Shown here piece after piece: positions 221-26,058 of a stretch of 64,000 nucleotides of DNA (its first letter is position 1; each line of letters opens with the position of its first letter). The notes under the pieces were generated by a model that made no database searches, was not told where the DNA came from, and worked only from the letters and a program-made list of their open reading frames with translations. The translations under genes were made by a program, and so were the position numbers. The stretch is from the IMG/VR virus record IMGVR_UViG_3300042473_001265, positions 124,001 to 188,000 of that record. One strand, 5' to 3'.

Positions 221-388
221 ATGGAAATCCAACCCAAAGATACTAGCCGCGGCCATTTTTATGTTAGTCTTGCAAAGAGTGCTATTCGTATTGTGGCAGG
301 CGGCTGTTTGATTACAGGTAATTTGCTAATGGCGGGTGTTTGCTTTATAATGGCAGAAGTGCTAGGCATTGTGGAGGAACTAGTATAA
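221..388 (+). CDS. Small hydrophobic/membrane protein, 55 aa (MEIQPKDTSRGHFYVSLAKS...AEVLGIVEELV)
   Basis: AGGAAA RBS upstream; stop overlaps next start (TAATG at 386-390); below ORF-track cutoff. Confidence 0.75.
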   Translation: MEIQPKDTSRGHFYVSLAKSAIRIVAGGCLITGNLLMAGVCFIMAEVLGIVEELV

Positions 389-1200
389 TGAAGAAAACCA
401 ACAAACCCACTTTGAAAGAAGTAACCAAAACACGCTACCACAAAAAATTCACTTACTACACCAACGATTCCATAATTGGTCGTAGTCTAAGATTGTATGG
501 CGAATATGGTCAGTCGGAAATTGATTTTTTACTTTCCATCATCAACAATATACAAAACAAGCCTGTGGTAGTGTATGATGTGGGTGCCAACATTGGTGTT
601 CATGCCACTGCATTTGCCAGCACTGGTGCTGAAGTTCATTGCTTTGAACCCAATCCGTTGAACTTTGCCATGCTGAAACAGAATACCAAAGGACTTGCCA
701 ATGTCACTTTGCACAACCTAGCAGCTACCAATGTGGCCGGTGACATTTTGATTCAGACATTTGATCCTGAAATTGTGGGCAACTACGGCGAGATGCTGAT
801 CAACAACGAGACCGGAGTCAGCGCACAGGCAGCACGGTTGGATGATACGGATATACCGCTGCCAAATCTGATTAAAATTGATGCCGAAGGTTCTGAACTG
901 GGTGTTATACAGGGCTGTCTTGAAAGCATTAAAAAGAACTTGCCATTGATCTACTACGAAGCACAGGAGTCTCCGCACCTGGACAAGATCTACCGCATGC
1001 TGACCGACATTGGCTATCACTTGTACTGGGGGTGTATTCGCAATTACAATCCTGACAATTTTAAAACCAACGCCGACAACATCTTTGGAAACAGTGCATT
1101 GTTCAGTGTGGTTGCTGTTCCTCCTGGATGGGCCGCTGTGGAAGGATTAGACCCTGTGATTGACGCCAATGACAGCTGGCGGCGCTTTTTATCTGAATGA
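388..1200 (+). CDS. FkbM-family SAM-dependent methyltransferase
   Basis: DVGANIGVH, FEPNP, IKIDAEGSE motifs; start moved to the TAATG-coupled ATG at 388. Confidence 0.9.
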   Translation: MKKTNKPTLKEVTKTRYHKKFTYYTNDSIIGRSLRLYGEYGQSEIDFLLSIINNIQNKPVVVYDVGANIGVHATAFASTGAEVHCFEPNPLNFAMLKQNTKGLANVTLHNLAATNVAGDILIQTFDPEIVGNYGEMLINNETGVSAQAARLDDTDIPLPNLIKIDAEGSELGVIQGCLESIKKNLPLIYYEAQESPHLDKIYRMLTDIGYHLYWGCIRNYNPDNFKTNADNIFGNSALFSVVAVPPGWAAVEGLDPVIDANDSWRRFLSE

Positions 1201-1225
1201 TCAATTTGCTCTAATTGGCCAAATA

Positions 1226-1259
1226 AGCAGTGAAAAACATTTTCACTGCTGTTTTTTTT
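1226..1259 (+). terminator. Rho-independent terminator
   Basis: AGCAGTGAAAA-ACA-TTTTCACTGCT stem followed by GTTTTTTTT. Confidence 0.8.
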
Positions 1260-1261
1260 AT

Positions 1262-1267
1262 TAAATA
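1262..1267 (+). promoter_or_regulatory. Putative late promoter (TAAATA), probably leaderless
   Basis: TAAATA 5 nt upstream of ATG 1273, no SD; resembles T4 late TATAAATA. Confidence 0.45.
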
Positions 1268-1272
1268 TCTGT

Positions 1273-1476: not shown

Positions 1477-1478
1477 CA

Positions 1479-3242: not shown

Positions 3243-3247
3243 AGCGT

Positions 3248-3580: not shown

Positions 3581-3858
3581 TAGAGTATATTGATGCAGAA
3601 GTGTATGCCGTTGCAGAAGTCATGCCAAGGTCACCTGTGCGGAAACAGGTATGGAATGGTGAACGGTTTGTGCCAATCCTATTGTACAGGATAAAAGGAT
3701 ATCCAGGCATGGCTGCAGAAAACTGGTTGCTGAAAAATTTTGGTCACGCAGGAATACATCGAGACGGAACATACTGGGACTACAGCAGCGCCGGGGACTT
3801 TATGTTGATGGATGAAAAAGTATATACATGGTATCAAATGAAATGGGGCAACCGATGA
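3577..3858 (+). CDS. Hypothetical protein
   Basis: GTGA overlap with previous stop; C-terminus (..YQMKW) resembles the previous gene's (..WRLKW). Confidence 0.65.
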   Translation: MIEYIDAEVYAVAEVMPRSPVRKQVWNGERFVPILLYRIKGYPGMAAENWLLKNFGHAGIHRDGTYWDYSSAGDFMLMDEKVYTWYQMKWGNR

Positions 3859-4823
3859 AAGTATTAATAACTGGCGGACTAGGACTGATCGGACACAATG
3901 TGGCAGCTCGTTTGCAGCAGCGTGAAGACACTGTAAGCATTGTGGATAGTCAAACCACCTACGGTATTATTCCGCGTGAAGAAGTTGACTATTTGATCGG
4001 TGAGCGTCTTAAAAAACTAGCACCGTGTAGTCACTATCATGACTACATTGAAAATGCAGATCGCATGGATGCCATTGTTGCTGCTGAAACTCCAGAAGTG
4101 ATCATACACTGTGCCAGCTTTCCCAGACAAAAAGTAGTCAATGCTAACCCTGCATACGCTGCTGATGTCATGATGCGTGGCTTGATCAATCTGCTTGAGA
4201 GTGCCAAAAAGCACAAGGTCAAGAGATTTGTGTACATGTCCAGCAGCATGGTCTACGGTGATTTTACAGATCAAGTGCTGGAAGATGACGAATGCAGACC
4301 GCAAGGGCAATATGGCATCATGAAGTTGGCAGGAGAATGGTTGGTCAAGGACTATGCTCGCAGAACCGGCATGGAGTATGTGATACTTCGGCCCAGTGCT
4401 GTGTACGGACCTCTTGATGTGGAGGATCGTGTGGTGGCCAAGTTCATGCTGACAGCCATGCGTGGCGGTGTGCTGAAAGTCAACGGTGCAGGCGAAACAC
4501 TGGACTTTACCTATGTGGATGATGCTGCGGATGGTGTGGTTGCTGCTGCAACTAGAATCATGAGTGCTAACCGAACATACAACATTACCAAATCACATTC
4601 AGTGAGCCTGTTACAAGCAGCCGAAATGATTGTGAAGATTGTGGGCAAGGGCACTATTGAATGTCGCGATAAAGATGCAGACTTTCCCAGCCGCGGAGCA
4701 CTGAACATTGATCGTGCAAGAGCCATCCTGGGCTTTGATCCCCGAGTAGACGTTGAACAAGGATTCCAAAATTACTATGAGTGGCTTTCAAATAGCGTTT
4801 ACTGGTCTACAAAGACAGTATAA
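3855..4823 (+). CDS. NAD-dependent nucleotide-sugar epimerase/dehydratase (extended SDR)
   Basis: GGLGLIG Rossmann motif, SSSMVYG, YGIMK (YxxxK), RPSAVYGP, DFTYVDD; ATGA-coupled start. Confidence 0.92.
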   Translation: MKVLITGGLGLIGHNVAARLQQREDTVSIVDSQTTYGIIPREEVDYLIGERLKKLAPCSHYHDYIENADRMDAIVAAETPEVIIHCASFPRQKVVNANPAYAADVMMRGLINLLESAKKHKVKRFVYMSSSMVYGDFTDQVLEDDECRPQGQYGIMKLAGEWLVKDYARRTGMEYVILRPSAVYGPLDVEDRVVAKFMLTAMRGGVLKVNGAGETLDFTYVDDAADGVVAAATRIMSANRTYNITKSHSVSLLQAAEMIVKIVGKGTIECRDKDADFPSRGALNIDRARAILGFDPRVDVEQGFQNYYEWLSNSVYWSTKTV

Positions 4824-5871
4824 CAATCTCAGAGAGGAGATACTGGATGCAACGGACCAGGTTCTAGCATCTGGCAATCTCATGAACGGCCAGTTCACTC
4901 AACAGTTTGAGGAATGGTTGGCTCAAAAGAATCATACCAATTATGCAGTACTGTGTCATTCAGGAACGCAGGCCTTGGAAATACTTGCTGGCTATTACCG
5001 CCCAGGCCGCACAGAGCATAAGCTGTATCTCCAGACAACCCCGCCCACAATATTGATTCCTGCCATGACGTTCCCTGCTAGTGCAAATGCATTTGTACGA
5101 GCAGGGTGGAACATACACTTGATTGACACTGATGCATATGGCAACATGAAATTCAGTAACATTCCGCCGGATCTGGATTACCAAGCTATACTTGGCATTG
5201 GATTGTATGGTTCAGCATTGCACGACAGTCTACGCCGTATTAGGCCGTTGATAATTGAAGATGCAGCACAACACTGGTTATCTAACAATTGCCATCGTGT
5301 GGGCGAAGCTAGTGCTATCAGTTTTGATCCCATGAAAAATCTAAACAACTACGGCAACGGTGGTGCTGTGGTCACAGACGATCATAATCTATGTGACTAT
5401 GCCCGTAACTGGTGTGACAACGGCAAACGATCTGGTCATACACAAACAGGCACTAACTCACGCATGAGTGAAGTAGACTGTGCGCAAATGATGGTCAAGA
5501 CTGTGTACCTGGCTCAATGGCAAGCTCGCAGAGAAAGCATTGCACGGCGTTACATAGCGGCATTTCGAGATGCACCGTTCCGTTGTCTAATTGACGACTC
5601 AAATGTGTTCGCTCACTGTTTCCACAAGTTTGTCATTGACACCAGCAATCGAGATCAATTACAAGTTGATCTACAGTCTGCGGGCATAGAGACTCGGGTG
5701 CATTATAAACATCCACTACACGAACTAGATGCATATCAACAGTATGCTGGGCCCAGTCTTCTCAGTGCTGCAAGTTCATTGAGTAGACGAGCGCTGAGTT
5801 TACCAATTTATCCTGAGTTAACGGATAGTGAAGTGGACTATGTTATAGATCAGGTACTAAGCTGCGTTTGA
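4777..5871 (+). CDS. DegT/DnrJ/EryC1/StrS PLP-dependent sugar aminotransferase
   Basis: SGTQAL, IEDAAQ, SFDPMKNL (PLP lysine), GNGGAVVT, GTNSRMSE, LSLPIYP. Confidence 0.92.
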   Translation: MSGFQIAFTGLQRQYNNLREEILDATDQVLASGNLMNGQFTQQFEEWLAQKNHTNYAVLCHSGTQALEILAGYYRPGRTEHKLYLQTTPPTILIPAMTFPASANAFVRAGWNIHLIDTDAYGNMKFSNIPPDLDYQAILGIGLYGSALHDSLRRIRPLIIEDAAQHWLSNNCHRVGEASAISFDPMKNLNNYGNGGAVVTDDHNLCDYARNWCDNGKRSGHTQTGTNSRMSEVDCAQMMVKTVYLAQWQARRESIARRYIAAFRDAPFRCLIDDSNVFAHCFHKFVIDTSNRDQLQVDLQSAGIETRVHYKHPLHELDAYQQYAGPSLLSAASSLSRRALSLPIYPELTDSEVDYVIDQVLSCV

Positions 5872-7663
5872 CGAACGCATAGCTGGCCAGCCACGCCCAT
5901 TCATAGCTCTTTCGAAGAGCTGCAAAATCCCCGTCAACTTCATTGTAGTATTCAACAGCATCCTCTGCACCCCAACGACTCCATTCTTCGTTGACCTGTA
6001 TTCGAGTCATGTTGTCAATGTTAATCCACTGTTTGATTCGATATTCATTTTCCACGTCAGGTAAACTGGCTTTGAGTTTTAGCACTTCGCGGAATGCAGT
6101 GCGCCAGCACAACCAGGCTGAAGTATTGTAGTATGCTATTCCGCTCAAGATGGGCACTACTTCGTGTGGCGAATCCAATGTGAAGTCTAGTCCAACACCA
6201 GGGTTGTCTAGCACCAATTGCCGGTTGTAGGCAATCATGGCCTGGTGACCATACACCAATCCATTCACAGGATTCTTTGCGTGAAAGATATAGTGCTTGG
6301 CTTGTTGCATGCGATCTGGTTGCCACTCAAAGTCAAAGTCGATATCAACTGCCAGCTTGGCAAACACAGCAAAGAACCAGGGTGTGGTGCTGGCCTGAGC
6401 CGCTGCATGATATGCTGCTGCTCGTCCATTGATGTTGTCTACTCGTACTGTGCGATTTTTCTTGGGCAACAAACTCAATCGCTTCCAATTGACTTCTGCG
6501 TTGGGCTCACCATTGCTGATAAACACAATATCCAACAGTTGATCTTTAAGCATGCGGTGCGTCTTGTCCACATAAGGATAATCGTATAGTTGTGTTTGAA
6601 TATGGCCAACTGCTGCTCTGGGCACAATCACACTGGTTGCACCTGGACTCAGCGGCACAATTGTTTTGGTTTCTGAACGCCACAATGGAACTGTGACTAA
6701 ATCGCCTGTTACATAGTCGGTGTTGGTAAATGTAGCAAGAGGACCAGACCAGCTGGAGTTTTTGACTGCGTCAACATGACTGTCGTTGTGATGTTCTATC
6801 ACAGGCATGGGCCTACGCGGAACAGATGTTTCAATAAAGTTTAAAGCATACCAATCTAACAATTCAATTTGATCTACTCTGTGCTGGAATGTGGGAACAT
6901 GCATGTAGAATGTGTCGCCAAACTTGTTGCTGCCGCTGGCAAATACATGCAGCATAGTGGCTTGCCATACTTCGGGATGCCACGAAAAATCAAAGTTTGA
7001 ATAATCACACACACTGCTGCATATCCACACATGTTCGTGTTCTGGCGGAATGCTTTTGGCCAGTCGTCGTAGTGTATCCAAATAGTTGTCAAAATATCTG
7101 ACACTGCGTGTGGTGTTTGGTATACGGCCAGCATTGCCGTCCATATGATCAATTTCATATATCGCAGTTGCTACTTTACGAGTTTTGATTTTTATCTGAT
7201 CAACATACTTTGTATCAGTTGCAGCGGGCATGCAACATTGTGGACCACCGGTTCGTTGATGCTGTGTGCCAAACTGATATATGTACGGAGGTTCAGTGTC
7301 ATCTGGATGCCATGTCCAATCAAATGTTGATACATCGGCTCCGTCAGGAACAGTCCATACGCCTTCAATTTTACCAATCCTAGGTACCAGTGTTTCTGTA
7401 CGATAATGTGTTTCAGTATAGCCCTGTTTGGGCACTAAATATGTACCGCTGCTCTTTTGCCATTGGCTGGGCCAGGCATGACGCTGATGCGCTTGCCATG
7501 GCACAGGTTCCCAAAGAAAATCAAAGTCTGCATAGTCCGATAAGTAATTTACAAACCAAAAGAAACGAGTACGACTCTGCTGTTGTGCTTGCTCAATGGT
7601 ATCTACTGCCTGCTCATGAGCGAACAAATTGGGTTTAGATCCAGAATAAAATACATCAAACAT
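5843..7663 (-). CDS. Glycosyltransferase-like protein with four FD[FW]xWxP repeat modules
   Basis: C-terminal domain (DIVFISNGEPNA..RVDNING..AYHAAA..NPVNGLVYG..WRTAFRE) paralogous to 22695-23621. Confidence 0.6.
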   Translation of the reverse strand: MFDVFYSGSKPNLFAHEQAVDTIEQAQQQSRTRFFWFVNYLSDYADFDFLWEPVPWQAHQRHAWPSQWQKSSGTYLVPKQGYTETHYRTETLVPRIGKIEGVWTVPDGADVSTFDWTWHPDDTEPPYIYQFGTQHQRTGGPQCCMPAATDTKYVDQIKIKTRKVATAIYEIDHMDGNAGRIPNTTRSVRYFDNYLDTLRRLAKSIPPEHEHVWICSSVCDYSNFDFSWHPEVWQATMLHVFASGSNKFGDTFYMHVPTFQHRVDQIELLDWYALNFIETSVPRRPMPVIEHHNDSHVDAVKNSSWSGPLATFTNTDYVTGDLVTVPLWRSETKTIVPLSPGATSVIVPRAAVGHIQTQLYDYPYVDKTHRMLKDQLLDIVFISNGEPNAEVNWKRLSLLPKKNRTVRVDNINGRAAAYHAAAQASTTPWFFAVFAKLAVDIDFDFEWQPDRMQQAKHYIFHAKNPVNGLVYGHQAMIAYNRQLVLDNPGVGLDFTLDSPHEVVPILSGIAYYNTSAWLCWRTAFREVLKLKASLPDVENEYRIKQWINIDNMTRIQVNEEWSRWGAEDAVEYYNEVDGDFAALRKSYEWAWLASYAFVKRSLVPDL

Positions 7664-10984: not shown

Positions 10985-10996
10985 CTGTGTCAACAA

Positions 10997-18853: not shown

Positions 18854-20187
18854 AATGATTGATACCATTCTTTTAGGTTAGGAAATGTGTTGCTAAAGTT
18901 TTTGTTCCTGCGCACATCATATTGATCAAAGAACTGGCGAAAGTCGTTGTGTAACTTGGGCATGTCAAATGTGTCGCTGTGTGGAGTTTTAACAATTTTC
19001 AAATAGTCAATCAATCTGCGAACATGATTCAGTTCAAATTCTTGACATGCTGATCTATTGTCAACTGATTCTTCCCACATGATCAAACAATTGCGAGCAG
19101 AGGACAACAAGGCAGGTGATAATACCAACGGAGATTGAAAACTTGGAAAGCGTAATATATTTAGTGTAAAATTAACTCGTTGTGTTCCGTAGGCTTTTTT
19201 TAATTTTATCAACTGTGTTAGGAATTCGGGCAATGTTTCTAAACACAATGCATTGATTGTACACATCACATGCACAGCACGAATATGATCGTGCTCCAAC
19301 AATTCTTGAACATTGTGCATCCATAGATCATAGTCCAAGCCGTCTCTTATGTATTCAGCAGCCGAGCCTGTTGCTTCGCAACTGGTGTATATCTCTAGGT
19401 GTGGGATATCTTGAACTCGTTCAATGAACTCCTGTAGCTTGATGCGATCCATGCCCAGATTTGAATTGATTGCTAGACGAGTTTGACTGCGACCTTGATT
19501 TGTTTTGAACCAGTCAATCAGCTTCCAGGTCTCACCGCTCATCAAGGGTTCGCCGCCGGTGATTCTCAGCTCTTGTAGTGTTCGGTGGAGGTCTGATTCC
19601 CACCAAGCAAAGAACGCTTCAACATATGGATTCGTCTCACCAAAGCGGTATAGTTGACTGCTATCGTGAGTGTGAGTAAAGTGGTTGCGCCCATCAGACA
19701 CCAAATTGGCATAGCCGCCGTGCTTTCGAATGTCATTGACCCATGTGCTACTGAAAGCAGGGTTACAATAGCTACAAGCAAATTGGCAAGTGCGGTCGAA
19801 CGCAATTTCAAGTGTGCGAAGATTGACGTCTTCATTGTACGGAGTTTGGTAAGCTTCATCAAGTGCCTTTATAGGGTAAATTTTACTTTTGTATACACGG
19901 TCGCTGACAGCATCAGTGGCCATGTCTTCGATCTTCCAGCAGTATTCACAACCGGCAGGGCGATCACCTGCCAGCATCTTCTTGCGATCATCTTTTTTCT
20001 TTGCTGTGTTATGCAGTGCAGCCGGATTGGTTTTTAGTTCTTCGAGATCAACAGCATGTGCTGGTGGATGATGACAACTGGTTGTTTGCCCGGAACCCAA
20101 CCATATAGTGGCATTGTACCATTTGGCTGCACAGAAACTAGCACTTTTGGTATCCAAGACCTGGTGCTTGAAATCTAGATCATTCAT
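18850..20187 (-). CDS. Radical SAM protein with N-terminal twitch-like domain (SCHH subtype)
   Basis: FCAAKW..SCHH..CEYCW; CQFACSYC; GGEP. Confidence 0.9.
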   Translation of the reverse strand: MNDLDFKHQVLDTKSASFCAAKWYNATIWLGSGQTTSCHHPPAHAVDLEELKTNPAALHNTAKKKDDRKKMLAGDRPAGCEYCWKIEDMATDAVSDRVYKSKIYPIKALDEAYQTPYNEDVNLRTLEIAFDRTCQFACSYCNPAFSSTWVNDIRKHGGYANLVSDGRNHFTHTHDSSQLYRFGETNPYVEAFFAWWESDLHRTLQELRITGGEPLMSGETWKLIDWFKTNQGRSQTRLAINSNLGMDRIKLQEFIERVQDIPHLEIYTSCEATGSAAEYIRDGLDYDLWMHNVQELLEHDHIRAVHVMCTINALCLETLPEFLTQLIKLKKAYGTQRVNFTLNILRFPSFQSPLVLSPALLSSARNCLIMWEESVDNRSACQEFELNHVRRLIDYLKIVKTPHSDTFDMPKLHNDFRQFFDQYDVRRNKNFSNTFPNLKEWYQSL

Positions 20188-21286
20188 TGAAATGTTTGTT
20201 TATAAATTGTTTAAAGCGGGCCGGAAATTCAGATCGAACTCGAGTTCGCATTTCCGCAAGATGTTGCTGGTTGTATTTACATACATTATAGCATTCTTTT
20301 AAGAAACTTGCAAGGTCTTGTTGACATAAATCTTTAACCACACGACTCACTTGCACCATTCTATCTTGATTGTTTGCTATTTCATCAAACCTCTCGTCAA
20401 TCACATGTCCGAATGTTTGAAATCCTAGATTATGCATATCTCTATAATATCCCTGATTGGCAACCGCAATCCATGGATGTCCAATTGCAATGGGTTTCCA
20501 TATTTTCTCTGTTCTAAAACTGTAGCGATAGTTTTGAACAGTTTCGGTCACCAAGCTAAAATAAGTATTGGTATACTGTGCCGGAACTAGATACACGTCT
20601 CCCCATATGTCAGACTCGAACAAATATTTTTTTACATTTTCATCAGTCTGAGATATGTCAACATTGAACCGATCAAGTTCGTATTGCCGATCGAGCAATT
20701 TCACCGGGCCATTGGCAGGATCTAAATTGCTCCATAATGCTGTATCAAGTACGTCGGCTAACTGTTCAATCATAAATTTTCTATGCTGTCTTCCTTTTCC
20801 GTTCAAAAATAAAAATTTATATGGTCGATTGGTTGAATAGGTGCGTTTATAAGTTTTTATAGCGTTGATATTTTCATCGTAGTCTAGTATTTTAGGAAGA
20901 AAATTTTCATATACAAGATGCAGATATTGTGCCGGAACATCGCCGCCGGTTAATAATAGTATTTTTCCTTTTTTGAGTAACTCAAGTAGATCAGTATTTT
21001 CATTTCCATTGGCCAGTTTAGTACGAAATTCTGGCCGGCCGCAACGATTTATTAAAGTTGCCGATCCTTCACTTGGTTCAGCATATATAGCTTTTATAGT
21101 ATTAGTTTTTACCAACTCTACAATTTTTTCAAAATTTTCTCCAAACTCAGCGTGACTTATCAAATATATAGCATTGGGAACCAAAGTGTGTTCTTGAAAA
21201 ATAGAAAATTTATCGTCGGCATACACAGCAAGTTCATCGTGTATTCCACATCCTGTGTCTATTATTAATTTACGATTGCCGAGCAT
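20180..21286 (-). CDS. Putative glycosyltransferase (GT10-like TEK motif)
   Basis: LVTETV..RTEKIWKPI..HPWI..GFQTF..DERFD; visibly more AT-rich than neighbours. Confidence 0.5.
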   Translation of the reverse strand: MLGNRKLIIDTGCGIHDELAVYADDKFSIFQEHTLVPNAIYLISHAEFGENFEKIVELVKTNTIKAIYAEPSEGSATLINRCGRPEFRTKLANGNENTDLLELLKKGKILLLTGGDVPAQYLHLVYENFLPKILDYDENINAIKTYKRTYSTNRPYKFLFLNGKGRQHRKFMIEQLADVLDTALWSNLDPANGPVKLLDRQYELDRFNVDISQTDENVKKYLFESDIWGDVYLVPAQYTNTYFSLVTETVQNYRYSFRTEKIWKPIAIGHPWIAVANQGYYRDMHNLGFQTFGHVIDERFDEIANNQDRMVQVSRVVKDLCQQDLASFLKECYNVCKYNQQHLAEMRTRVRSEFPARFKQFINKHFNE

Positions 21287-22694
21287 GGTACTCACATTCC
21301 TTCCACCAGGCACTCATTTCTGGAAACACGCTCAAGAAGTCTGTACCGTGTCTGTGATCTGCTTCTGTAAAGAACCGATAGAAGTCAGCTTTATTTCGTT
21401 GCAGGTACGCAGAGTCTAATCGTTGTCCATCACGCATCCAGGCTATGTCGCGATCAAGACGAGATATTTCATAATCTTTGAAACCGTGCAATCTGGTTGC
21501 TTCTGTTTCGATACCGTGTTGCATTGATATTTTTAATTTTTCCAACTGTGCTGCATAGCTTTCTGGCAACAATTGTAAACTTTGCCAAGCGGGTTGTCGC
21601 AGCACTGGAGTATCAAACCACACACGCTGATATGTGCTGCTGTGTTTTTTTCTAAGTTCTATAATGCCATCTAACAGCTCGGGTAAACTTGTCACACTTA
21701 GGTTATTCATTGTCACAATAAATGTCACACTGTTGCGCGAAGGAACTTCGGTTAAGAACTGATTTACTCTGCTCCACACCAAATCAAAATTCATGCCATG
21801 GCGCATGTACTCGGCCTGACGGCCCCATCCGTCTAGACTGATGTATTGCATAAAGTGCTCAACCACTCCTTCTTGGCACAATTGTTTGGTGTAGGCCAAA
21901 TAGCGTTGCCAACTTTTTTCATCCACACTGAAGTTGCTGGTTACATTGAGATGCAGATTAGATTTGGGATTGGCCAGCACATAGTCAAACACACGATAGG
22001 TATTCCGATCCAGCAATGGTTCGCCGCCGGTCATTCTGAAGTGCTCCAACTCGGGATACAAGGTGGGCCACCACTGCCAAAACGCTTCCACATAGGGATT
22101 GTGCTCACGAACAGGAATGGATTTACGGTCACCTGCAAAGTGCTCAGGCGCATTGTGCGGGATGGATGTAGGATAAGCACCGTGCCGATCAGTTTCTTGT
22201 TGCCAGGTGCTGCTGAACTGTGGGCTACAATAGCTGCAAGCAAGGTTACAAGCGTTGTTGAAATTTACTTCAACATAACTGGGAGTAATGTCAGCGTCCC
22301 ACTCTGCATTCACAATGGTGCCAAAGTCTTTGGCAGCCCACGGTTCTCCTGATCTGTAATGTCGGTCACTGAGTTTGCCATTGTCTTCCATTGTCCAACA
22401 GTAGCTGCATTCAGCAGGACGTGTGCCCTCTAGCATTTGTTTACGCTGTTGTTTTTTATAATCAGTGTTGTGTAATGCAGCAGGATTGCGACCAATGGCA
22501 TCTACAGGAATACGATGCAAGGGCGGGTGGTAACAACTGTTGTTAAGGCCAGTGGTCAGGTGTAGACTGACTTGTTTCCATTTGGCCAGACACATGCTGG
22601 GACTAACAGTATCTAACTGTTGTTTGATTAGTTCGGCATCACTTAAAAACTTTGATTTAAAGTCTTCGTTGACTTCGTCACCTTTGTTTTGCAT
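21270..22694 (-). CDS. Radical SAM protein with N-terminal twitch-like domain (SCYH subtype)
   Basis: MCLAKW..SCYH..CSYCW; CNLACSYC; GGEP. Confidence 0.9.
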   Translation of the reverse strand: MQNKGDEVNEDFKSKFLSDAELIKQQLDTVSPSMCLAKWKQVSLHLTTGLNNSCYHPPLHRIPVDAIGRNPAALHNTDYKKQQRKQMLEGTRPAECSYCWTMEDNGKLSDRHYRSGEPWAAKDFGTIVNAEWDADITPSYVEVNFNNACNLACSYCSPQFSSTWQQETDRHGAYPTSIPHNAPEHFAGDRKSIPVREHNPYVEAFWQWWPTLYPELEHFRMTGGEPLLDRNTYRVFDYVLANPKSNLHLNVTSNFSVDEKSWQRYLAYTKQLCQEGVVEHFMQYISLDGWGRQAEYMRHGMNFDLVWSRVNQFLTEVPSRNSVTFIVTMNNLSVTSLPELLDGIIELRKKHSSTYQRVWFDTPVLRQPAWQSLQLLPESYAAQLEKLKISMQHGIETEATRLHGFKDYEISRLDRDIAWMRDGQRLDSAYLQRNKADFYRFFTEADHRHGTDFLSVFPEMSAWWKECEYHARQS

Positions 22695-23621
22695 TCACCA
22701 ACCTTCTTGACTACGAATAACATCAATCTCTCTCACAGCGACACCGCGATTGTGCCAGTTACTGCGATAATGATGTTTAAAGAATTTACTAGCAGACTCA
22801 TCAATCCATACCATTGGTAAATCCAACTGCGTAGTCAATTCGTTTGCTACTCGGCTCAACACCACTTCCGGGTCAGTGTCTTTTACTGTGTCCCACAGTT
22901 GTTCCAGCGCAGCAAAATCTTGTACTGCGCGATGGTCCCAGTTGGTCAGCATGGTCATGTATGAACCCATGCGCGATCCAGCCATACTCCAAATGCCGTG
23001 TTCAGCATCGCGACCCACATTGTGCCATATGGTCAAGTTGTCGAGATTGCGTTGATGCACACGATTTTGAAACTCTGCCACTGTGGGTTTCTTACCTGTG
23101 TTCAAACACATTTTGACCCCTTCGCGAAACCCGGCACGCCATGCGTGAAAAGCTGAACCATTGGGATATGTGGTTGAATAGCAATCATGCATGGCCCAGT
23201 ACAACGGATCAAAGCAAAACTCCACTTCGGTTGCTGCACGACCGTCGGTGGCTTCGTGTGTTCGCATATCGTTGACAAACTTTCTAGTCCACGAACTCAG
23301 CCCGCCGTTGCCATACATCAATCCGTTTATGTGATTACGGGCACGCCAGCGGAACACTGCGGATTCCCATTGTGCATCAGGCAACTCCAGTGTCTGGTTA
23401 AAAAATTCAGGGTCTGGCATGTTGTCGCCGTCGATCAACACAAAGCGTTCGGTATCACTGGCCGCAGCAGCAGCTTTGTGTGCTGCATCACTGCCCCGAA
23501 CACCATCCACTCGCTTGGCCCAAGGAACCATATTGCGAATCTTTATCCAGAATTCTTCTTTTTGTGGTTCATCATAAGTTAGATAAATGCAGTCAAGGTC
23601 TGCGATGTCAATCCGATTCAT
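22695..23621 (-). CDS. Glycosyltransferase-like protein (GT-A fold)
   Basis: IYLTYDEP, RVDGVRGSDAAHKAAA, LIDGDN (DxD), NGLMYGNGG, WRAGFREGVKM. Confidence 0.65.
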   Translation of the reverse strand: MNRIDIADLDCIYLTYDEPQKEEFWIKIRNMVPWAKRVDGVRGSDAAHKAAAAASDTERFVLIDGDNMPDPEFFNQTLELPDAQWESAVFRWRARNHINGLMYGNGGLSSWTRKFVNDMRTHEATDGRAATEVEFCFDPLYWAMHDCYSTTYPNGSAFHAWRAGFREGVKMCLNTGKKPTVAEFQNRVHQRNLDNLTIWHNVGRDAEHGIWSMAGSRMGSYMTMLTNWDHRAVQDFAALEQLWDTVKDTDPEVVLSRVANELTTQLDLPMVWIDESASKFFKHHYRSNWHNRGVAVREIDVIRSQEGW

Positions 23622-23955
23622 GTGATTTTAAACTCCATTTTGTATGTGGTTGTTGCGGATCAACAACAATGCTGATGTTGCTGGGTACGCAAGGTGTACC
23701 GGTTGAGCCGGGTACTAGTTTGGTAACTGTTTTCTTTGGCACTATGTGTACAAGTTTTCCTTCAATGACCTGCACACGATGTGAGCTCAGTCGATATGTT
23801 TCAGCATCTATGTCTATGTAATTACCTGGCTGGTGTTCCATGCTGTAAGATACCGGGCGACCATGTTCGTCGTAGTACAGCCTAAAAAACACAGGCGCAG
23901 GTTCTGGCACAGGTTCTGCCCAGGCCTTCCAAAAATTTTCTTCAGTTTCATTCAC
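23608..23955 (-). CDS. Hypothetical protein
   Basis: ORF track frame; start uncertain (GTG 23955 or ATG 23973). Confidence 0.6.
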   Translation of the reverse strand: MNETEENFWKAWAEPVPEPAPVFFRLYYDEHGRPVSYSMEHQPGNYIDIDAETYRLSSHRVQVIEGKLVHIVPKKTVTKLVPGSTGTPCVPSNISIVVDPQQPHTKWSLKSHESD

Positions 23956-24229
23956 GGTCCGGGGCCAATCCATTGCTGTGTTTATGAGCCGCTGTGTCGA
24001 CATCTTGATCAAATCGTTTCACTTGCACAGGGTCAATACCCAGTACTTTGGCGTAGGAGCACAACAAACATTTGGGATTGCCACAATCCATGGCATGCTG
24101 TTTTGCAAACTTGTGTGGTTGACTGACATCCGATCCTTTGGATTTTGCAATCCGGGTCTGCTTCTTTACAGCGTTTTCATCTTTGAGCAGTCGTTTGCTG
24201 TGTTTGATTTTGTCTTGTTCAGTACTCAT
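23948..24229 (-). CDS. Basic hypothetical protein with H..CGNPKCLLC putative Zn-binding motif
   Basis: GGAG RBS and ATGA overlap at 24226-24229. Confidence 0.7.
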   Translation of the reverse strand: MSTEQDKIKHSKRLLKDENAVKKQTRIAKSKGSDVSQPHKFAKQHAMDCGNPKCLLCSYAKVLGIDPVQVKRFDQDVDTAAHKHSNGLAPDRE

Positions 24230-24969
24230 GTCAATCTCCAGTCTTTCATATGATAATGCACAAATCCCCACTGTGCTATGGTGTTTATACGCACACCCGG
24301 ATTGGTATTTTCCCATACCAATTCTTTGGTCCAGTCGTTAGTGTGGGTGGCAACAATGCCTGGTTTCATATGCACCATAGTGGGTCCATATCCCAGGGGC
24401 AAGGTCACTTGTTCTCTGCCTGTGATTTCTACTGCCATTGCATAAACAACATCAGTTGACGGAACTTCTTCGGGAAATTTCAACAGTGTTTTAAAGTTGT
24501 CCCAGTTTTCAAAAATACTCCTGACCAATTGAAAAAAGTCCTGTGCTGTTTTACTTACACGCCAATATGTAATAGCATTATAAACATCAGGCAACTTGTT
24601 CACATCAAACAATTTTCTGTAACGACGATTGCTACCAGGTTGATCGTAAAAGTCTCTACATCCCTGACTGATCACAACATCACGATGTTCAAACATGGTC
24701 CACCAGTGATTCACTGGACTGGCTGCAATCATATCTGCTTCCAGTTTGATAGTTTGCCTGTAAGGGCTGGCAGCAAACACTTGCCAGTCGTTGGCAAAGC
24801 CACCGCGATCGCCGTAGGGCAACATTTCTTTTGTCAATACAGTTATGTTGGCATCAGGATGCCATGCTCGTATGCTGTCGGCCAACTGGTTGGCGCAGGC
24901 CACATAGTCCACTGTGTCTGTGTTTACAGCTGGGATTAGGTATCCGCGCTCAGCAAGGATTTTCAACAA
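24226..24969 (-). CDS. Glycosyltransferase-like protein (GT-A, GT8-like)
   Basis: SPYRQTIKLEAD, STDVVYA, VHMKP; paralog of 24950-25753. Confidence 0.6.
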   Translation of the reverse strand: MLKILAERGYLIPAVNTDTVDYVACANQLADSIRAWHPDANITVLTKEMLPYGDRGGFANDWQVFAASPYRQTIKLEADMIAASPVNHWWTMFEHRDVVISQGCRDFYDQPGSNRRYRKLFDVNKLPDVYNAITYWRVSKTAQDFFQLVRSIFENWDNFKTLLKFPEEVPSTDVVYAMAVEITGREQVTLPLGYGPTMVHMKPGIVATHTNDWTKELVWENTNPGVRINTIAQWGFVHYHMKDWRLT

Positions 24970-25753
24970 TTGCTCCTAGCTGTTGTTTGCCCATGGCATG
25001 AAAGTCCTGACTTATAGTAACCCATCGTGCTTTGTTGTCAATTGTTTTAAAGTCTATTCTGTATAGATCCGGTGATAACTGTGTCAATCGGTGTTCTGGT
25101 GTAACGCTGACCAGTGAACCCGGGATTGAGTTGACTTTCAATGTGTGTCCGTTTAGAGTATTTAACGCAATGCTCAGTGCATGGTCGTTTCTGTAGGTGG
25201 CTGTGTTATTTTTGTATAGATTTCTATAGTGTGTCCAGTTGTCTCTGACCATTTGCATTGAATCAAACAACAATTCAACCGACTTGCTGCGATTGAACAT
25301 CATCACAGTGGCCCACCACATGGGCATGCGATGACTGCCAAAGTAATTTAGATCATCAAATGTTCTAACACCTGTGGCATCGGCGGCCCATCTATGGCAT
25401 AAAAATTCTTGATGGCTTTGTAGTATAGTAGCAAGTTGATCACTGGCCACAACATAATCGGCGTCCAATACCAATGTTTGATCCCATGGACTAAGACGAT
25501 AAGCGTCCATACGGTTGGTGTTGTGCCACGCAACAGGTTCGCCAATGTCAGCAAAGTGTCGTACACCACTGCCTGCTGGATGGTCAACCAACACAACACG
25601 ATCAAAACTGTGGCCAACGAGTGGTTCTTTGTCTGTAACTAAACAAACAGGAATTTTTAAATGGCGGTGTATGTTGGCAGCAGACCAATTGGCCATGGCA
25701 ACATAATCAATATGCTTGTTGTTAAACGCAAATATTAGTGCGCCAGTGGTCAT
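24950..25753 (-). CDS. Glycosyltransferase-like protein (GT-A, GT8-like)
   Basis: SPWDQTLVLDAD (DxD), RNDHALSIA, HAMGK; ATGA-coupled start MTTGALIFA. Confidence 0.65.
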   Translation of the reverse strand: MTTGALIFAFNNKHIDYVAMANWSAANIHRHLKIPVCLVTDKEPLVGHSFDRVVLVDHPAGSGVRHFADIGEPVAWHNTNRMDAYRLSPWDQTLVLDADYVVASDQLATILQSHQEFLCHRWAADATGVRTFDDLNYFGSHRMPMWWATVMMFNRSKSVELLFDSMQMVRDNWTHYRNLYKNNTATYRNDHALSIALNTLNGHTLKVNSIPGSLVSVTPEHRLTQLSPDLYRIDFKTIDNKARWVTISQDFHAMGKQQLGAIVENPC

Positions 25754-26058
25754 CGTTTTTTGTTTAATTCTTCGTATTCGACCAACCATGCTGTCATTTG
25801 TTCTTGCCAGCGACCCAGTGCTAGATACTGTAGTTCTGCGGGATTAATCTGCACTGGTGTTTCGTACAGGTCTAAAATTACCACTGCATCTTGTACTGGA
25901 ATTGCTTGCAACAGTGTCAGCAGTTCAGGGCCAGCACACCACATGCCACCATTGTAGGCAAACAACATTTTGGCGGCATATTTTTCTTTGAGCAGACGGC
26001 GGGCGGCCACATGCTCAAAACGAGTGCGACCAGTTTCGATCAATTGTTCAGTATTCAT
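25750..26058 (-). CDS. Hypothetical protein, first gene of the modification operon
   Basis: ORF track 102 aa directly after promoter. Confidence 0.75.
   Translation of the reverse strand: MNTEQLIETGRTRFEHVAARRLLKEKYAAKMLFAYNGGMWCAGPELLTLLQAIPVQDAVVILDLYETPVQINPAELQYLALGRWQEQMTAWLVEYEELNKKR

What the first reader, a model, noticed from the sequence alone, without database searches (positions are those of the whole stretch)
388..26058. Candidate new system: phage-encoded glycan/aminosugar tailoring pathway combining radical SAM, aminotransferase, amidinotransferase, carbamoyltransferase, oxygenase, methyltransferase and about 7 GTs
Seen: about 25 kb directly downstream of the tail genes is largely devoted to modification enzymes. 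A 17-gene minus-strand run (26058 to 10997) has overlapping or abutting genes and its own sigma70-like promoter behind a terminator. Known: the same enzyme classes act in aminoglycoside and alkaloid tailoring: twitch-type radical SAM dehydrogenase (BtrN), DegT aminotransferase (BtrR/StsC), amidinotransferase (StrB1/SxtG) and O-carbamoyltransferase (TobZ/NodU/SxtI). Some phage carbamoyltransferases act on hydroxymethyl-C in DNA. Inference: the phage builds a heavily decorated sugar (oxidise, aminate, amidinate/carbamoylate, methylate) and transfers it to virion proteins, DNA or the host envelope. No hydroxymethylase is visible in this window and the island abuts Ser/Thr-rich tail genes, which mildly favours virion or surface glycosylation.
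Basis: partly seen in the sequence, partly recalled or inferred. Interest (0 to 1): 0.9.

Follow-up and report, generated by a model that had tools for sequence, protein, structure and literature searches.

The report
Jumbo-phage radical-SAM glycosylation operon
A large uncultured phage carries, just after its tail-fibre genes, a strictly conserved operon of five ancient radical-SAM enzymes, sugar-transferase-like proteins and a carbamoyltransferase; its bacterial relatives sit in clusters that look like glycosylated-peptide makers, so it probably decorates a protein with an unusual, radically tailored sugar.

Summary
The island is real and far from patchy. In 51 of 51 related jumbo-phage contigs that span it, the order is U308–R5–R4–R3–R2–R1–U367–carbamoyltransferase, with 1–11 accessory genes interleaved. 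It starts behind a conserved terminator plus sigma70-like promoter, right after a Ser/Thr-rich fibre gene.

- **Confirmed:** FkbM methyltransferase, NAD epimerase/dehydratase, DegT aminotransferase and a TobZ/NovN-type O-carbamoyltransferase.
- **Different from claimed:** the "BtrN-like" radical SAM is five paralogues of the uncharacterised N-terminal-twitch family NF033640.
- **Not found:** an amidinotransferase or an oxygenase.
- **Weakly supported:** the "7 GTs" are three families with only motif- or fold-level support.

U367 models confidently but matches no solved structure.

New evidence on function:
- N-twitch radical SAMs sit beside glycosyltransferases in every other context examined.
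- The U308 domain (37–42% identical) recurs in bacteria, fused to a GT-B domain. These genes lie next to double-glycine-leader peptides and C39-ABC exporters. Two such clusters also carry an N-twitch radical SAM.

Best reading (confidence 0.4): soluble enzymes build and radical-tailor a glycan on a protein acceptor, probably the phage's own fibres. DNA and host-envelope targets remain open. Novelty: new variant of a known kind.

The parts
26066..26111 (-). Transcription boundary: a terminator hairpin (26111-26092, AAAGGGCC-TTAG-GGCCCTTT plus a T-run) overlapping a sigma70-like promoter (TTTACT-17-TATAAT, 26094-26066)
   Evidence: The same hairpin-plus-promoter arrangement sits between the fibre gene and the first module gene in relatives, with different stem sequences.
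25750..26058 (-). U102: small conserved protein of unknown role, first gene of the module
   Evidence: Found in 66 loci. Alignment A7 shows a conserved AYNGG motif, and RsoM2USA ORF354 aligns. It has no double-glycine-leader features.
24950..25789 (-). U279: GT-A-like (GT8-like?) protein with an LDAD motif; paralogue of U247
   Evidence: Paralogy. Found in 70 loci. The profile hits only glycogenin (GT8) in the PDB, at E 0.15. No Pfam hit. RsoM2USA ORF353 is 30% identical.
24226..24969 (-). U247: second GT-A-like paralogue
   Evidence: Matches phrog_1903, function unknown. RsoM2USA ORF352 is 27% identical.
23608..24012 (-). U134: small, weakly conserved protein of unknown role
   Evidence: Found in 73 loci. 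Alignment A8.
22695..23621 (-). U308: highly conserved GT-A-like enzyme with TYDEP and invariant D-G-D-N motifs. It is the core domain shared with the bacterial peptide-associated clusters.
   Evidence: - Mean column identity 71%.
- AF2 pLDDT 73.6.
- Best Foldseek matches are nucleotidyltransferase and GT-A folds, E 0.07-1.
- 1369 representative clusters.
- 37-42% identical to the C-terminal domain of bacterial GT28_C fusions.
- RsoM2USA ORF350 is 36% identical.
21270..22694 (-). R5: N-terminal-twitch radical SAM
   Evidence: NF033640 E 5e-96, 322 bits against a cutoff of 170. Monophyletic orthologue clade, SH-aLRT 100.
20180..21313 (-). Pc: accessory protein of the Pa/Pb/Pc family, inserted between R5 and R4
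   Evidence: Paralogy. Alignment A3. 2895 homologues, all hypothetical, with no Pfam hit. No PDB hit. Present in only about 30 loci.
18850..20187 (-). R4: N-terminal-twitch radical SAM
   Evidence: NF033640 E 4e-90. Clade support 99.
17534..18868 (-). R3: N-terminal-twitch radical SAM
   Evidence: NF033640 E 7e-120. Clade support 95. Fused to R2 in 13 loci.
16323..17537 (-). R2: N-terminal-twitch radical SAM
   Evidence: NF033640 E 4e-103. Clade support 100, in a clade that also holds the sixth copy at 57552-59135.
15044..16342 (-). R1: N-terminal-twitch radical SAM
   Evidence: NF033640 E 6e-83. Clade support 100.
13951..15054 (-). U367: conserved enzyme-like protein whose fold matches no solved structure
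   Evidence: - Found in 71 loci, with about 60 invariant columns.
- AF2 pLDDT 83.5, pTM 0.83.
- No PDB match: best E 0.25, TM below 0.2.
- Matches only uncharacterised phage proteins in BFVD, including one from Atu_ph07.
12342..13856 (-). O-carbamoyltransferase of the NodU/CmcH/TobZ/NovN/GdmN type
   Evidence: Pfam Carbam_trans_N and Carbam_trans_C. PDB matches to NovN (4e-51), GdmN and TobZ. phrog_1601. Present in all 51 loci that span the module.
11794..12342 (-).
   Evidence: No Pfam hit at E<=5. No similarity to a genuine 2OG oxygenase from locus L144. Found in only 4 loci.
10997..11785 (-). Secreted S11 D-Ala-D-Ala carboxypeptidase, last gene of the run; an accessory gene seen only in this phage
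   Evidence: Pfam Peptidase_S11 E 1e-36. Signal-peptide-like N-terminus. Found in 1 of 80 loci.
7662..10984 (+). Convergent arm: Pa (7662-8795), Pb (8779-9972) and U339 (9965-10984)
   Evidence: Pa and Pb are paralogues of Pc. The arrangement CbT followed by convergent U339, Pb and Pa recurs in about 20 loci. U339 has only a weak PylC-like_N hit, E 0.005.
5843..7663 (-). U606: 606-aa protein whose C-terminal domain is U308-like but lacks the DxD motif
   Evidence: hhalign gives 98.9% probability against the bacterial U308 domain; FAVFAKL replaces LVDADN. Linked to DegT and the epimerase in L022, L044, L073 and L077.
3828..5871 (+). NDP-sugar 4,6-dehydratase/epimerase (3828-4823) and DegT/EryC1 aminotransferase (4753-5871): an amino-sugar supply pair
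   Evidence: Pfam E 1e-44 and 3e-55.
340..1200 (+). FkbM-family methyltransferase
   Evidence: Pfam PF05050 E 3e-14. Not seen in the +/-10 kb loci of relatives.
26134..28482 (-). Candidate acceptors: fibre proteins U330 (26134-27126; 29% Ser+Thr) and U426 (27202-28482; C-terminal intramolecular-chaperone domain)
   Evidence: Composition. U426 hits a phrog virion structural protein and Peptidase_G2. U330 directly precedes U102 in 62 loci. The acceptor role is inferred, not shown.

Best explanation
Proposal: the operon is a protein-directed glycosylation and glycan-tailoring system.

What is shown:
- The module has its own sigma70-like promoter, placed behind a terminator.
- It encodes only soluble proteins, apart from the secreted S11 accessory peptidase at its 3' end.

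Inferred mechanism:
1. The GT-A-like transferases (U279, U247, U308, and in some phages Pa/Pb/Pc and U606) attach sugars to a protein acceptor. The most likely acceptor is the phage's own Ser/Thr-rich fibre proteins, encoded immediately upstream.
2. The five anciently diverged N-terminal-twitch radical SAM enzymes (R5 to R1) each perform a distinct step initiated by a 5'-deoxyadenosyl radical. Each step starts with C-H abstraction on the glycan or at the glycan-peptide junction. Oxidation, epimerisation, deoxygenation or C-C bond formation are all possible.
3. U367, the SGNH-like proteins, the O-carbamoyltransferase and (in relatives) an APS-kinase-like protein add finishing groups.
4. Interleaved accessory genes vary the product between phages, much as O-antigen clusters vary.

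Shown: the gene content, family memberships, synteny, transcription signals and the bacterial homologous contexts. Inferred: the acceptor and every chemical step.
For: 1. One selected unit.
- 51 of 51 loci share the order U308-R5-R4-R3-R2-R1-U367-CbT, and 50 are fully co-directional.
- Orthologues are 45-77% identical, while the paralogues are only 21-32% identical.
- Each of the five forms a well-supported clade.
- R3 and R2 are fused in 13 loci.

2. All five radical SAMs keep the CX3CX2C motif and four N-terminal cysteines. All score well above the NF033640 cutoff.

3. N-twitch radical SAMs lie beside glycosyltransferases in every other context examined:
- Vibrio phage K566: rSAM, GT8 (PF01501, E 8e-8), rSAM, rSAM, GT4-like.
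- Methylomagnum plasmid: GT2, GT4 and an ABC transporter.
- MAG L144: PF03407 transferase, a U308 homologue and an epimerase.
- L217: three GT2 genes, MBOAT and an ABC2 transporter.
- Hahella: an EryCIII-like GT.

4. Link to a peptide or protein acceptor.
- U308-domain proteins in bacteria are fusions of GT28_C with the U308 domain.
- They sit next to double-glycine-leader peptides, C39-peptidase ABC exporters and a small GT-A-like protein, in L204 (Agarivorans aestuarii), L207-209, L210, L213 and L216.
- L204 and L216 also carry an N-twitch radical SAM, 27-28% identical to R3 over its full length (E 8e-43 and 3e-47).

5. No module enzyme has a transmembrane segment (only the accessory S11 peptidase has a signal peptide), and there is no Wzx/Wzy-type or lipid-carrier gene. 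This fits a cytoplasmic acceptor.

6. The module abuts the fibre genes in 62 loci. It does so too in the cultured Ralstonia phage RsoM2USA, which has a mini-module (ORF354-348) after fibre-like ORF355.

7. Sugar-supply and decoration enzymes (epimerase/dehydratase, DegT, FkbM, CbT, SGNH) are attached to the island in several lineages.
Against: - No glycosyltransferase assignment in the window reaches significance. U308's Foldseek matches have E>=0.07. U279/U247 match glycogenin at E 0.15. Pa/Pb/Pc match nothing.
- The acceptor is inferred from adjacency and from bacterial analogy only.
- The phage has no double-glycine-leader peptide and no C39 exporter.
- A terminator and a separate sigma70-type promoter split the module from the fibre genes. 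Co-location is therefore not co-transcription, and the module may be expressed early.
- In 9 relatives the carbamoyltransferase is followed by a kinase and a dCMP deaminase. Those are neighbours typical of characterised phage 5hmC carbamoyltransferases (PMC8670742).
- No chemistry of any N-twitch radical SAM is known.
Confidence: 0.4

Rival explanations
1. Host-envelope or free-sugar remodelling. The island is an auxiliary-metabolism cluster that makes unusual NDP-sugars or oligosaccharides. These enter host LPS, capsule or other polysaccharide, for example to block superinfection. Alternatively they are released as a free glycoside.
For: - Two bacterial N-twitch radical SAMs lie in polysaccharide clusters with GT2/GT4, MBOAT and ABC-2 exporters.
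- The epimerase/dehydratase, DegT, FkbM, carbamoyltransferase and SGNH classes are typical of O-antigen and capsule loci.
- A sigma70-like promoter suggests early expression by the host polymerase.
- A secreted DD-carboxypeptidase ends the operon in this phage.
Against: - No priming transferase, flippase, polymerase, Gtr-type or other membrane protein appears in the module, either in the window or in 80 relatives.
- The core U308 domain is tied to peptide clusters in bacteria, not to polysaccharide clusters.
- The strict five-fold conservation next to fibre genes is unexplained by this reading.
Confidence: 0.2
2. DNA hypermodification. The enzymes glycosylate, carbamoylate and radical-tailor a hydroxymethylated base in phage DNA to evade restriction.
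For: - A phage carbamoyltransferase of this family makes 5-carbamoyloxymethyl-C, and such genes co-occur with dCMP deaminase (PMC8670742).
- In 9 relatives a dCMP deaminase follows CbT, and in 28 a P-loop kinase does.
- Radical SAM enzymes take part in thymidine hypermodification (PMC8989533, listed).
- All module enzymes are soluble, and the promoter looks early.
Against: - No ThyA-like hydroxymethylase, TET/JBP or aGPT-Pplase is found in the window or in the +/-10 kb loci. Only a standard ThyX is present.
- In the cited study, carbamoyltransferases on unmodified contigs were the ones flanked by glycosyltransferases.
- None of the homologous contexts found for the U308 domain or the N-twitch radical SAMs shows a link to DNA metabolism.
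- The rest of the 340-kb genome was not inspected.
Confidence: 0.12
3. Phage-made glycosylated RiPP. A small phage protein such as U102 or U134 is the substrate. The product is a modified peptide with a role in infection or competition, parallel to the bacterial double-glycine-leader clusters.
For: - The U308 domain and N-twitch radical SAM co-occur with precursor peptides in bacteria.
- Two small conserved ORFs lie inside the core, and also in RsoM2USA.
Against: - U102 and U134 have no leader or core organisation, no double-glycine motif and no PYG motif. They look like folded proteins.
- There is no C39 exporter or leader protease.
Confidence: 0.1
4. There is no single pathway: the region is a hypervariable dump of unrelated morons next to the tail genes.
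For: Accessory genes do vary a great deal (1-11 inserted per locus). Several window genes (S11, U182, FkbM, ThyX) are rare or absent in relatives.
Against: The core order is identical in 51 of 51 loci, with overlapping genes, a shared promoter, an R3-R2 fusion and a reduced version in a distant cultured phage.
Confidence: 0.03

Closest known systems
Glycocins and other glycosylated RiPP systems (for example SunS/sublancin): GT plus double-glycine-leader peptide plus C39-ABC exporter
   Same: Bacterial homologues of the phage core domain U308 (37-42% identical) and of the N-twitch radical SAM lie in clusters with double-glycine-leader peptides, C39-ABC exporters and glycosyltransferases. SunS appears among the weak fold matches of U308.
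   Different: The phage has no leader peptide, exporter or protease. It has five radical SAMs, U367 and a carbamoyltransferase. The bacterial clusters themselves look undescribed: no paper found links glycocins with these radical SAMs.
Virus-encoded virion glycosylation (chlorovirus PBCV-1 capsid glycans, Mimivirus fibril glycans, mycobacteriophage capsid and tail glycosylation). This comparison is from my own knowledge.
   Same: A virus-encoded, host-independent set of soluble GT-like enzymes, amino-sugar synthesis (dehydratase plus DegT-type aminotransferase) and methyltransferase, placed next to fibre genes.
   Different: To my knowledge none of those systems contains radical SAM enzymes, a carbamoyltransferase or the U367 fold. 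Glycosylation of this phage's proteins has not been shown.
   Same: A DegT-family aminotransferase and a TobZ-homologous O-carbamoyltransferase are present. The radical SAMs carry an auxiliary-cluster twitch domain.
   Different: The twitch domain is N-terminal, whereas in BtrN, from my own knowledge, it is C-terminal. No similarity to BtrN surfaced in the NCBIfam scan. Five copies are conserved, while DegT is accessory. No amidinotransferase is present.
Phage 5-hydroxymethylcytosine carbamoyltransferase pathway (MetaGPA, PMC8670742)
   Same: The same carbamoyltransferase superfamily, carried on a phage. A dCMP deaminase is adjacent in 9 relatives.
   Different: No ThyA-like hydroxymethylase or MazG lies nearby. 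The enzyme is embedded in an operon of GT-like and radical SAM genes, the context that study associated with unmodified contigs.
LPS and polysaccharide gene islands of marine T4-like cyanophages, and radical-SAM-rich environmental T4-like genomes (PMC5332604)
   Same: A large phage with a block of sugar-modifying auxiliary genes and many radical SAM genes. One environmental T4-like genome with 12 radical SAM genes is reported.
   Different: Here the radical SAMs form a fixed, ordered five-gene array of one specific family with conserved partners. The phage belongs to the distant Rak2/Atu_ph07-like jumbo group.

Membership tests
NF033640 N-terminal-twitch radical SAM (R1-R5, and the copy at 57552-59135) | HMM score above the curated cutoff of 170 bits | tested here: met
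   R1-R5 score 279-401 bits. The sixth copy was not scanned with NCBIfam. It shows SPASM followed by Radical_SAM in Pfam and falls in the R2 clade.
NF033640 N-terminal-twitch radical SAM | CX3CX2C radical SAM motif, with a four-Cys auxiliary-cluster (twitch) motif N-terminal to it | tested here: met
   Invariant C155/C159/C162 and C41/C59/C101/C104 (R3 numbering). Pfam places SPASM at residues 9-105, before Radical_SAM at 120-312.
NF033640 N-terminal-twitch radical SAM | SAM cleavage activity and a defined substrate | not testable with these tools
   No characterised member was found in the literature searches.
   The auxiliary domain is N-terminal. The weak secondary NCBIfam hits are to other radical SAM families; none is to BtrN.
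NodU/CmcH/TobZ O-carbamoyltransferase (12342-13856) | Both Carbam_trans_N and Carbam_trans_C domains, and homology to solved members | tested here: met
   Pfam E 9e-34 and 2e-46. PDB matches to NovN 4e-51, GdmN 2e-45 and TobZ 5e-39.
Phage 5hmC carbamoyltransferase pathway | Co-occurrence with a ThyA-like dCMP hydroxymethylase (and MazG, dCMP deaminase) | tested here: inconclusive
   The window has only ThyX. No ThyA-like gene is seen in the 80 loci, but a dCMP deaminase follows CbT in 9. The rest of the genome was not examined. The discriminating residues (TobZ W408, G421, R423) could not be evaluated, because the paper text does not give the residue states.
GT-A glycosyltransferase (U308) | Invariant DxD metal and nucleotide-sugar binding motif after an N-terminal Rossmann-like beta-alpha-beta core | tested here: met
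   D64-G65-D66-N67 is invariant in phages, and D-A-D-N in the bacterial fusions. The model shows alternating strands and helices at residues 2-112.
GT-A glycosyltransferase (U308) | Significant fold or sequence match to a known GT family | tested here: inconclusive
   The best Foldseek matches are nucleotidyltransferases and GT-A enzymes (IspD, RmlA, STIV A197, GtrB, SunS), but at E 0.07-1.4 and TM 0.2-0.3. No Pfam or PDB sequence hit.
GT8 glycosyltransferase (U279/U247) | A match to PF01501 or to solved GT8 enzymes | tested here: inconclusive
   No Pfam hit for 31 members. The five PDB hits at E<=1 are all glycogenin, at E 0.15-0.31, and span the N-terminus through the DxD motif. hhalign against a genuine phage GT8 is not significant.
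Glycosyltransferase (Pa/Pb/Pc) | Any sequence or profile match to a GT family | tested here: not met
   No Pfam, NCBIfam, PHROG or PDB hit. All 2895 homologues are hypothetical. The TEK-like motif resembles fucosyltransferases only from memory.
DegT/DnrJ/EryC1 sugar aminotransferase (4753-5871) | Full-length PF01041 match | tested here: met
   E 3e-55, covering profile positions 3-359 of 360.
   No Pfam hit in any of the 31 ORFs. U367, the best unknown candidate, has a confident model with no PDB fold match.
   No hit at E<=5 for U182 and its relatives. No similarity to a genuine 2OG oxygenase.
Glycocin-like RiPP system | A precursor peptide with a double-glycine leader, plus a C39-peptidase ABC exporter | tested here: not met
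   Neither is present in the window or the 80 loci. Both are present in the bacterial homologous clusters.

The most novel reading that the evidence does not exclude
The operon installs a glycan on phage fibre proteins, and five dedicated radical SAM enzymes then rewrite it. That would be a new class of virion post-translational modification. It would also give the first function for the N-terminal-twitch radical SAM family (NF033640) as radical glycan or glycopeptide tailoring enzymes. The same enzyme pair (U308 domain plus N-twitch radical SAM) would define an undescribed family of glycosylated RiPPs in bacteria, with double-glycine-leader precursors that carry a PYG core motif.
Probability: 0.3. 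Interest if true: 0.85.

Novelty: new variant of a known kind. Interest (0 to 1): 0.7.

Why it matters
- **Abundance.** The module is very common in metagenomes. R3 alone has more than 6500 protein clusters at 90% identity, and the U308 family has 1369 clusters at 50% identity. Yet every core protein is annotated as hypothetical or as generic "radical SAM".
- **Chemistry.** Five ancient paralogues kept in fixed order imply five non-redundant radical reactions. The family has no known chemistry, and it sits beside a conserved protein (U367) whose predicted fold matches no solved structure.
- **Phage biology.** If the product decorates virion fibres, it would be a new layer of phage surface chemistry. 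That bears on host recognition, on resistance to proteases and on evasion of defences.
- **Natural products.** The bacterial counterparts point to an unexplored glycosylated-peptide class.
- **Tractability.** A cultured relative, Ralstonia phage RsoM2USA (ORF348-354), makes the question testable by experiment.

Tried and rejected
- Megablast of 20 kb against cultured phages found nothing.
- tblastn of R3 found distant hits in only three cultured phages and one plasmid.
- Profile searches of U367, U308 and Pa/Pb/Pc against PDB sequences found nothing significant.
- hhalign found no link between U367 and Pa/Pb/Pc, U308 and U279/U247, U279/U247 and a genuine GT8 or PF03407 protein, or U279/U247 and the bacterial 229-aa GT-A-like family.
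- I then scanned genome contigs with a degenerate twitch-motif DNA pattern. It mostly retrieved ordinary C-terminal SPASM radical SAMs, and four ORFs (five loci counting the tblastn-only hit L124) had the N-terminal layout. The motif is therefore generic and the scan gave little.
- The T4 late-promoter motif TATAAATA is absent from the window.
- The N-terminal 370 residues of U606 do not align with the GT28_C part of the bacterial fusions.
- U102 and U134 were examined as possible precursor peptides and rejected.
- A conserved G-Y-G-Q-[S/T] motif in U330 orthologues resembles the bacterial PYG core motif. From my own recollection it may simply be a common fibre N-terminal motif, so I give it no weight.
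- Literature searches for the N-twitch family, for jumbo phage plus radical SAM plus GT, and for glycocin plus radical SAM found no description of such a system.

Full report
**What the window is**

The window comes from an uncultured jumbo myophage, IMG/VR UViG_3300042473_001265, 340 kb. Its baseplate wedge protein (43726-47139) is about 34% identical to those of Atu_ph07, 121Q/Rak2-like and Erwinia jumbo phages. One long minus-strand block runs from the baseplate genes to 10997. In order, it holds:
- a 4815-aa ORF (29279-43726);
- fibre-like genes U206, U426 and U330;
- the region of the finding.

Names such as U308 are my own labels: U plus the ORF length in residues. R1-R5 are the five radical SAM genes.

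**Checking the observation**

The minus-strand run from 26058 to 10997 is real. I count 16 ORFs, one of them (23948-24316) doubtful. They overlap or abut, except for gaps of 94 bp and 8 bp.

The 75-bp gap upstream of the run carries the strongest terminator-like hairpin in the 19 kb scanned. A TTTACT-17-TATAAT promoter-like site overlaps it. Promoter-like sites overall are no commoner than chance. This one, however, is conserved in position: most relatives have a GC-rich hairpin followed by a TATAAT or TATACT -10 element, often with a perfect TTGACA -35, between the fibre gene and the first module gene. The stem sequences differ in a compensatory way. The enzymes therefore form their own transcription unit with a host-type promoter.

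**Gene content**

Confirmed by Pfam, NCBIfam or PDB:
- FkbM methyltransferase (340-1200)
- ThyX (2535-3227)
- NAD-dependent epimerase/dehydratase (3828-4823)
- DegT aminotransferase (4753-5871)
- S11 DD-carboxypeptidase (10997-11785)
- a two-domain O-carbamoyltransferase (12342-13856), homologous to NovN, GdmN and TobZ at E 4e-51 to 5e-39

The main surprise is that five consecutive-but-one genes are paralogues, 21-32% identical to each other. All five belong to NCBIfam NF033640, "twitch domain-containing radical SAM protein" (279-401 bits against a cutoff of 170). In this family the auxiliary-cluster domain lies N-terminal to the radical SAM core. The CX3CX2C motif and four N-terminal cysteines are invariant. 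A sixth copy lies at 57552-59135, and an ordinary rSAM-SPASM protein at 62604-63572. I found no literature on the function of this family.

No ORF matches an amidinotransferase or an oxygenase, even at E<=5.

None hits a Pfam GT model. The evidence for each is as follows.
- **U308.** It is extremely conserved (71% mean column identity), with TYDEP and invariant DGDN motifs. Its AF2 model (pLDDT 73.6) matches only nucleotidyltransferase and GT-A folds, and weakly (E 0.07-1.4).
- **U279/U247.** The profile's only PDB hits at E<=1 are glycogenins, at E 0.15-0.31.
- **Pa/Pb/Pc.** No detectable relative of known function, among 2895 homologues.

U367 gives a confident model (pLDDT 83.5, pTM 0.83). 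It has no PDB fold match. In BFVD it matches only uncharacterised phage proteins, one of them from Atu_ph07.

**Conservation**

A viral-contig scan with R3 returned 80 loci, 49-100% identical. ORF-by-ORF mapping shows a fixed backbone:

fibre U426 – U330 – U102 – U279 – U247 – U134 – U308 – R5 – R4 – R3 – R2 – R1 – U367 – (1-4 SGNH/DUF6071-like genes) – carbamoyltransferase

- All 51 loci that span U308 to CbT have exactly this order. Fifty are fully co-directional. Between 1 and 11 accessory genes (median 4) are interleaved: Pa/Pb/Pc members, extra radical SAMs and SGNH-like proteins.
- A maximum-likelihood tree recovers R1, R3, R4 and R5 as clades with SH-aLRT 95-100, separated by long branches. 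All R2 orthologues fall in one clade (SH-aLRT 100) that also holds the window's sixth copy at 57552-59135. The five-fold duplication is therefore ancient, and each copy has been retained.
- In 13 loci R3 and R2 are fused into a single ORF of about 850 aa that keeps both motifs.
- Beyond CbT the island continues in one of three ways. One is an APS-kinase-like P-loop protein (28 loci), sometimes followed by a dCMP deaminase (9 loci). The second is a convergent arm of Pa, Pb and U339. The third is U606 with DegT and the epimerase.
DegT, the epimerase, FkbM, U182 and S11 are accessory.

**A reduced version in a cultured phage**

Ralstonia phage RsoM2USA (343 kb) has the following genes directly after fibre-like ORF355 and downstream of its giant virion protein ORF361 (PMC8504454):
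- ORF354, a U102-like gene
- ORF353, 30% identical to U279
- ORF352, 27% identical to U247
- ORF351
- ORF350, 36% identical to U308
- ORF349, a radical SAM 35% identical to R5 and sister to the R4+R5 clade
- ORF348, a second U308-like gene

All are annotated as hypothetical.

**What the families do elsewhere**

N-twitch radical SAMs sat next to glycosyltransferases in all but two of the other contexts I could open. The exceptions were the Chitinophagales MAG below, which has four of them beside a GDSL-like protein, and the Rickettsiales MAG L136, where no GT was found among the neighbours scanned.
- Vibrio phage K566: rSAM, GT8 (PF01501, above cutoff), rSAM, rSAM, GT4-like.
- A Methylomagnum plasmid: a polysaccharide locus with GT2, GT4 and an ABC transporter.
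- A marine MAG contig: a second radical SAM, a 2OG oxygenase, a U308 homologue (hhalign 99.6%), an epimerase and a PF03407 sugar transferase.
- A Chitinophagales MAG: four N-twitch radical SAMs plus a GDSL-like protein.
- Hahella ganghwensis: next to an EryCIII-like GT.
- A 3.4-Mb genome: among MBOAT, three GT2 genes and an ABC-2 exporter.

The most informative result came from a profile search with U308, which found 1369 representative clusters. Many bacterial members are proteins of 730-770 aa. Their N-terminal part has a Glyco_tran_28_C/EryCIII-like GT-B domain. Their C-terminal part is a U308 domain, 37-42% identical to the phage protein (E 1e-47 to 1e-55), with the D-x-D-N motif invariant.

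In five independent genomic contexts (L204 from Agarivorans aestuarii, L207-209, L210, L213 and L216), these genes sit beside:
- one or two small ORFs with textbook double-glycine leaders (…ISIAGG, …EAFGG, …TVAGG, …DIAGG, …LSIAGG), followed by Gly/Ser/Thr/Pro-rich cores with a recurrent PYG motif;
- a Peptidase_C39-ABC exporter;
- an HlyD-like protein (annotated in three of the five contexts: L204, L213, L216);
- a conserved 229-238-aa GT-A-like protein.

Two of these clusters (L204, L216) also encode an N-twitch radical SAM. It is 27-28% identical to R3 over its full length, and NCBI itself names the L204 protein a twitch domain-containing radical SAM protein. So the two signature enzymes of the phage core co-occur in bacteria in what look like glycosylated-RiPP clusters. 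I found no paper describing such clusters.

**Interpretation**

The evidence favours glycan chemistry on a protein or peptide acceptor:
- None of the module's enzymes has a transmembrane segment; only the accessory S11 peptidase carries a signal peptide.
- There is no lipid-carrier machinery.
- Sugar-supply and decoration enzymes are attached to the island.
- The core domain is homologous to one tied to peptide substrates in bacteria.

The nearest candidate acceptors are the fibre proteins immediately upstream. U330 is 29% Ser+Thr. That assignment is inference from adjacency, and the terminator and promoter between them show the two are not co-transcribed.

The chemistry of R1-R5 is unknown. 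I propose five distinct hydrogen-abstraction-initiated steps on the glycan or at its linkage. The grounds are the retention of five orthologues, the R3-R2 fusion and the constant association with GTs.

Alternatives:
- **DNA hypermodification stays open.** Characterised phage 5hmC carbamoyltransferases co-occur with dCMP deaminases, and such a gene follows CbT in nine relatives. But no hydroxymethylase was seen, and in that study the GT-flanked carbamoyltransferases were on unmodified contigs.
- **Host-envelope remodelling** is weakened by the lack of any membrane component.
- **A phage RiPP** is weakened by the lack of a plausible precursor.

**Limits**
- Only the 64-kb window and +/-10 kb of each relative were examined.
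- ORFs were called mechanically.
- Only two structures could be predicted.
- The GT assignments remain below significance.
- All functional statements beyond family membership are inferences.

Noticed in passing
L204:212-10250 (Agarivorans aestuarii, GCA_036320465.1); also L216:2586-12284, L213:8390-17482, L210:4876-11984, L207:8286-14733: These bacterial clusters look like an undescribed class of glycosylated RiPP. Each has double-glycine-leader peptides with a PYG core motif, fusions of GT28_C with the U308 domain, a 229-238-aa GT-A-like protein and a C39-ABC exporter; L204, L213 and L216 also have an annotated HlyD-like protein. L204 and L216 also have an N-twitch radical SAM.
   Followed up: partly
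L026, L034, L035, L036, L075 and 8 further loci, e.g. L034:9959-12514: R3 and R2 are fused into a single ORF of about 850 aa that keeps both CX3CX2C motifs. This Rosetta-stone fusion suggests the two enzymes work together.
   Followed up: partly
window 5843-7663 (-): The U308-like C-terminal domain of U606 has lost the DxD motif: FAVFAKL replaces LVDADN. It may be catalytically dead or repurposed. Its N-terminal 370 residues match nothing.
   Followed up: partly
window 10997-11785 (-): An S11 D-Ala-D-Ala carboxypeptidase with a signal-peptide-like N-terminus ends the operon. It is present in only this one of 80 related loci, so it looks like a recently acquired enzyme acting on host peptidoglycan.
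   Followed up: partly
window 29279-43726 (-): A single 4815-aa ORF lies between the baseplate wedge and the fibre genes. It has no internal repeats detectable by BLAST. It occupies the same position as the >288-kDa virion protein ORF361 of RsoM2USA, but shows no detectable similarity to the 558 C-terminal residues of ORF361 held in locus L083.
   Followed up: partly
window 57552-59135 (+) and 62604-63572 (+): A sixth N-twitch radical SAM, with a 150-aa N-terminal extension and falling in the R2 clade, lies outside the island. So does an ordinary rSAM-SPASM protein. They flank SbcD-like (59144-60157) and SbcC-like (60854-62617) genes.
   Followed up: partly
window 13951-15054 (-): U367 gives a confident AF2 model that matches no PDB structure. 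Its only structural relatives are about ten uncharacterised phage proteins, including one from Agrobacterium phage Atu_ph07. This appears to be a phage-restricted enzyme-like family whose predicted fold matches no solved structure.
   Followed up: yes
window 26134-27126 (-), residues ~36-42, and orthologues in L003-L051: The fast-evolving Ser/Thr-rich fibre U330 keeps a G-Y-G-Q/E-[S/T] motif near its N-terminus in most orthologues. This loosely resembles the PYG core motif of the bacterial precursor peptides. From my own recollection it may be only a common fibre N-terminal motif.
   Followed up: partly
window 13857-13950 and 20001-22000: The only sizeable gap in the operon (94 bp, between U367 and CbT) lies exactly where relatives carry 1-4 SGNH/DUF6071-like genes, which suggests a deletion here. 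The 20001-22000 interval (Pc plus the 3' third of R5 and the 5' end of R4) has the lowest GC of the island (0.397 against about 0.44), which fits recent acquisition of Pc.
   Followed up: no
window 2535-3227 (+): A flavin-dependent thymidylate synthase (ThyX, E 2e-39) sits inside the plus-strand arm, between the methyltransferase and the sugar genes. ThyX is the only C1-transfer pyrimidine enzyme in the window.
   Followed up: no
L026, L030, L034-L036, L048, L069, L075, L079 downstream of CbT: In one clade of relatives the carbamoyltransferase is followed by an APS-kinase-like P-loop protein and a dCMP/MafB19-type deaminase. The deaminase is one of the neighbours reported for 5hmC carbamoyltransferases.
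   Followed up: partly
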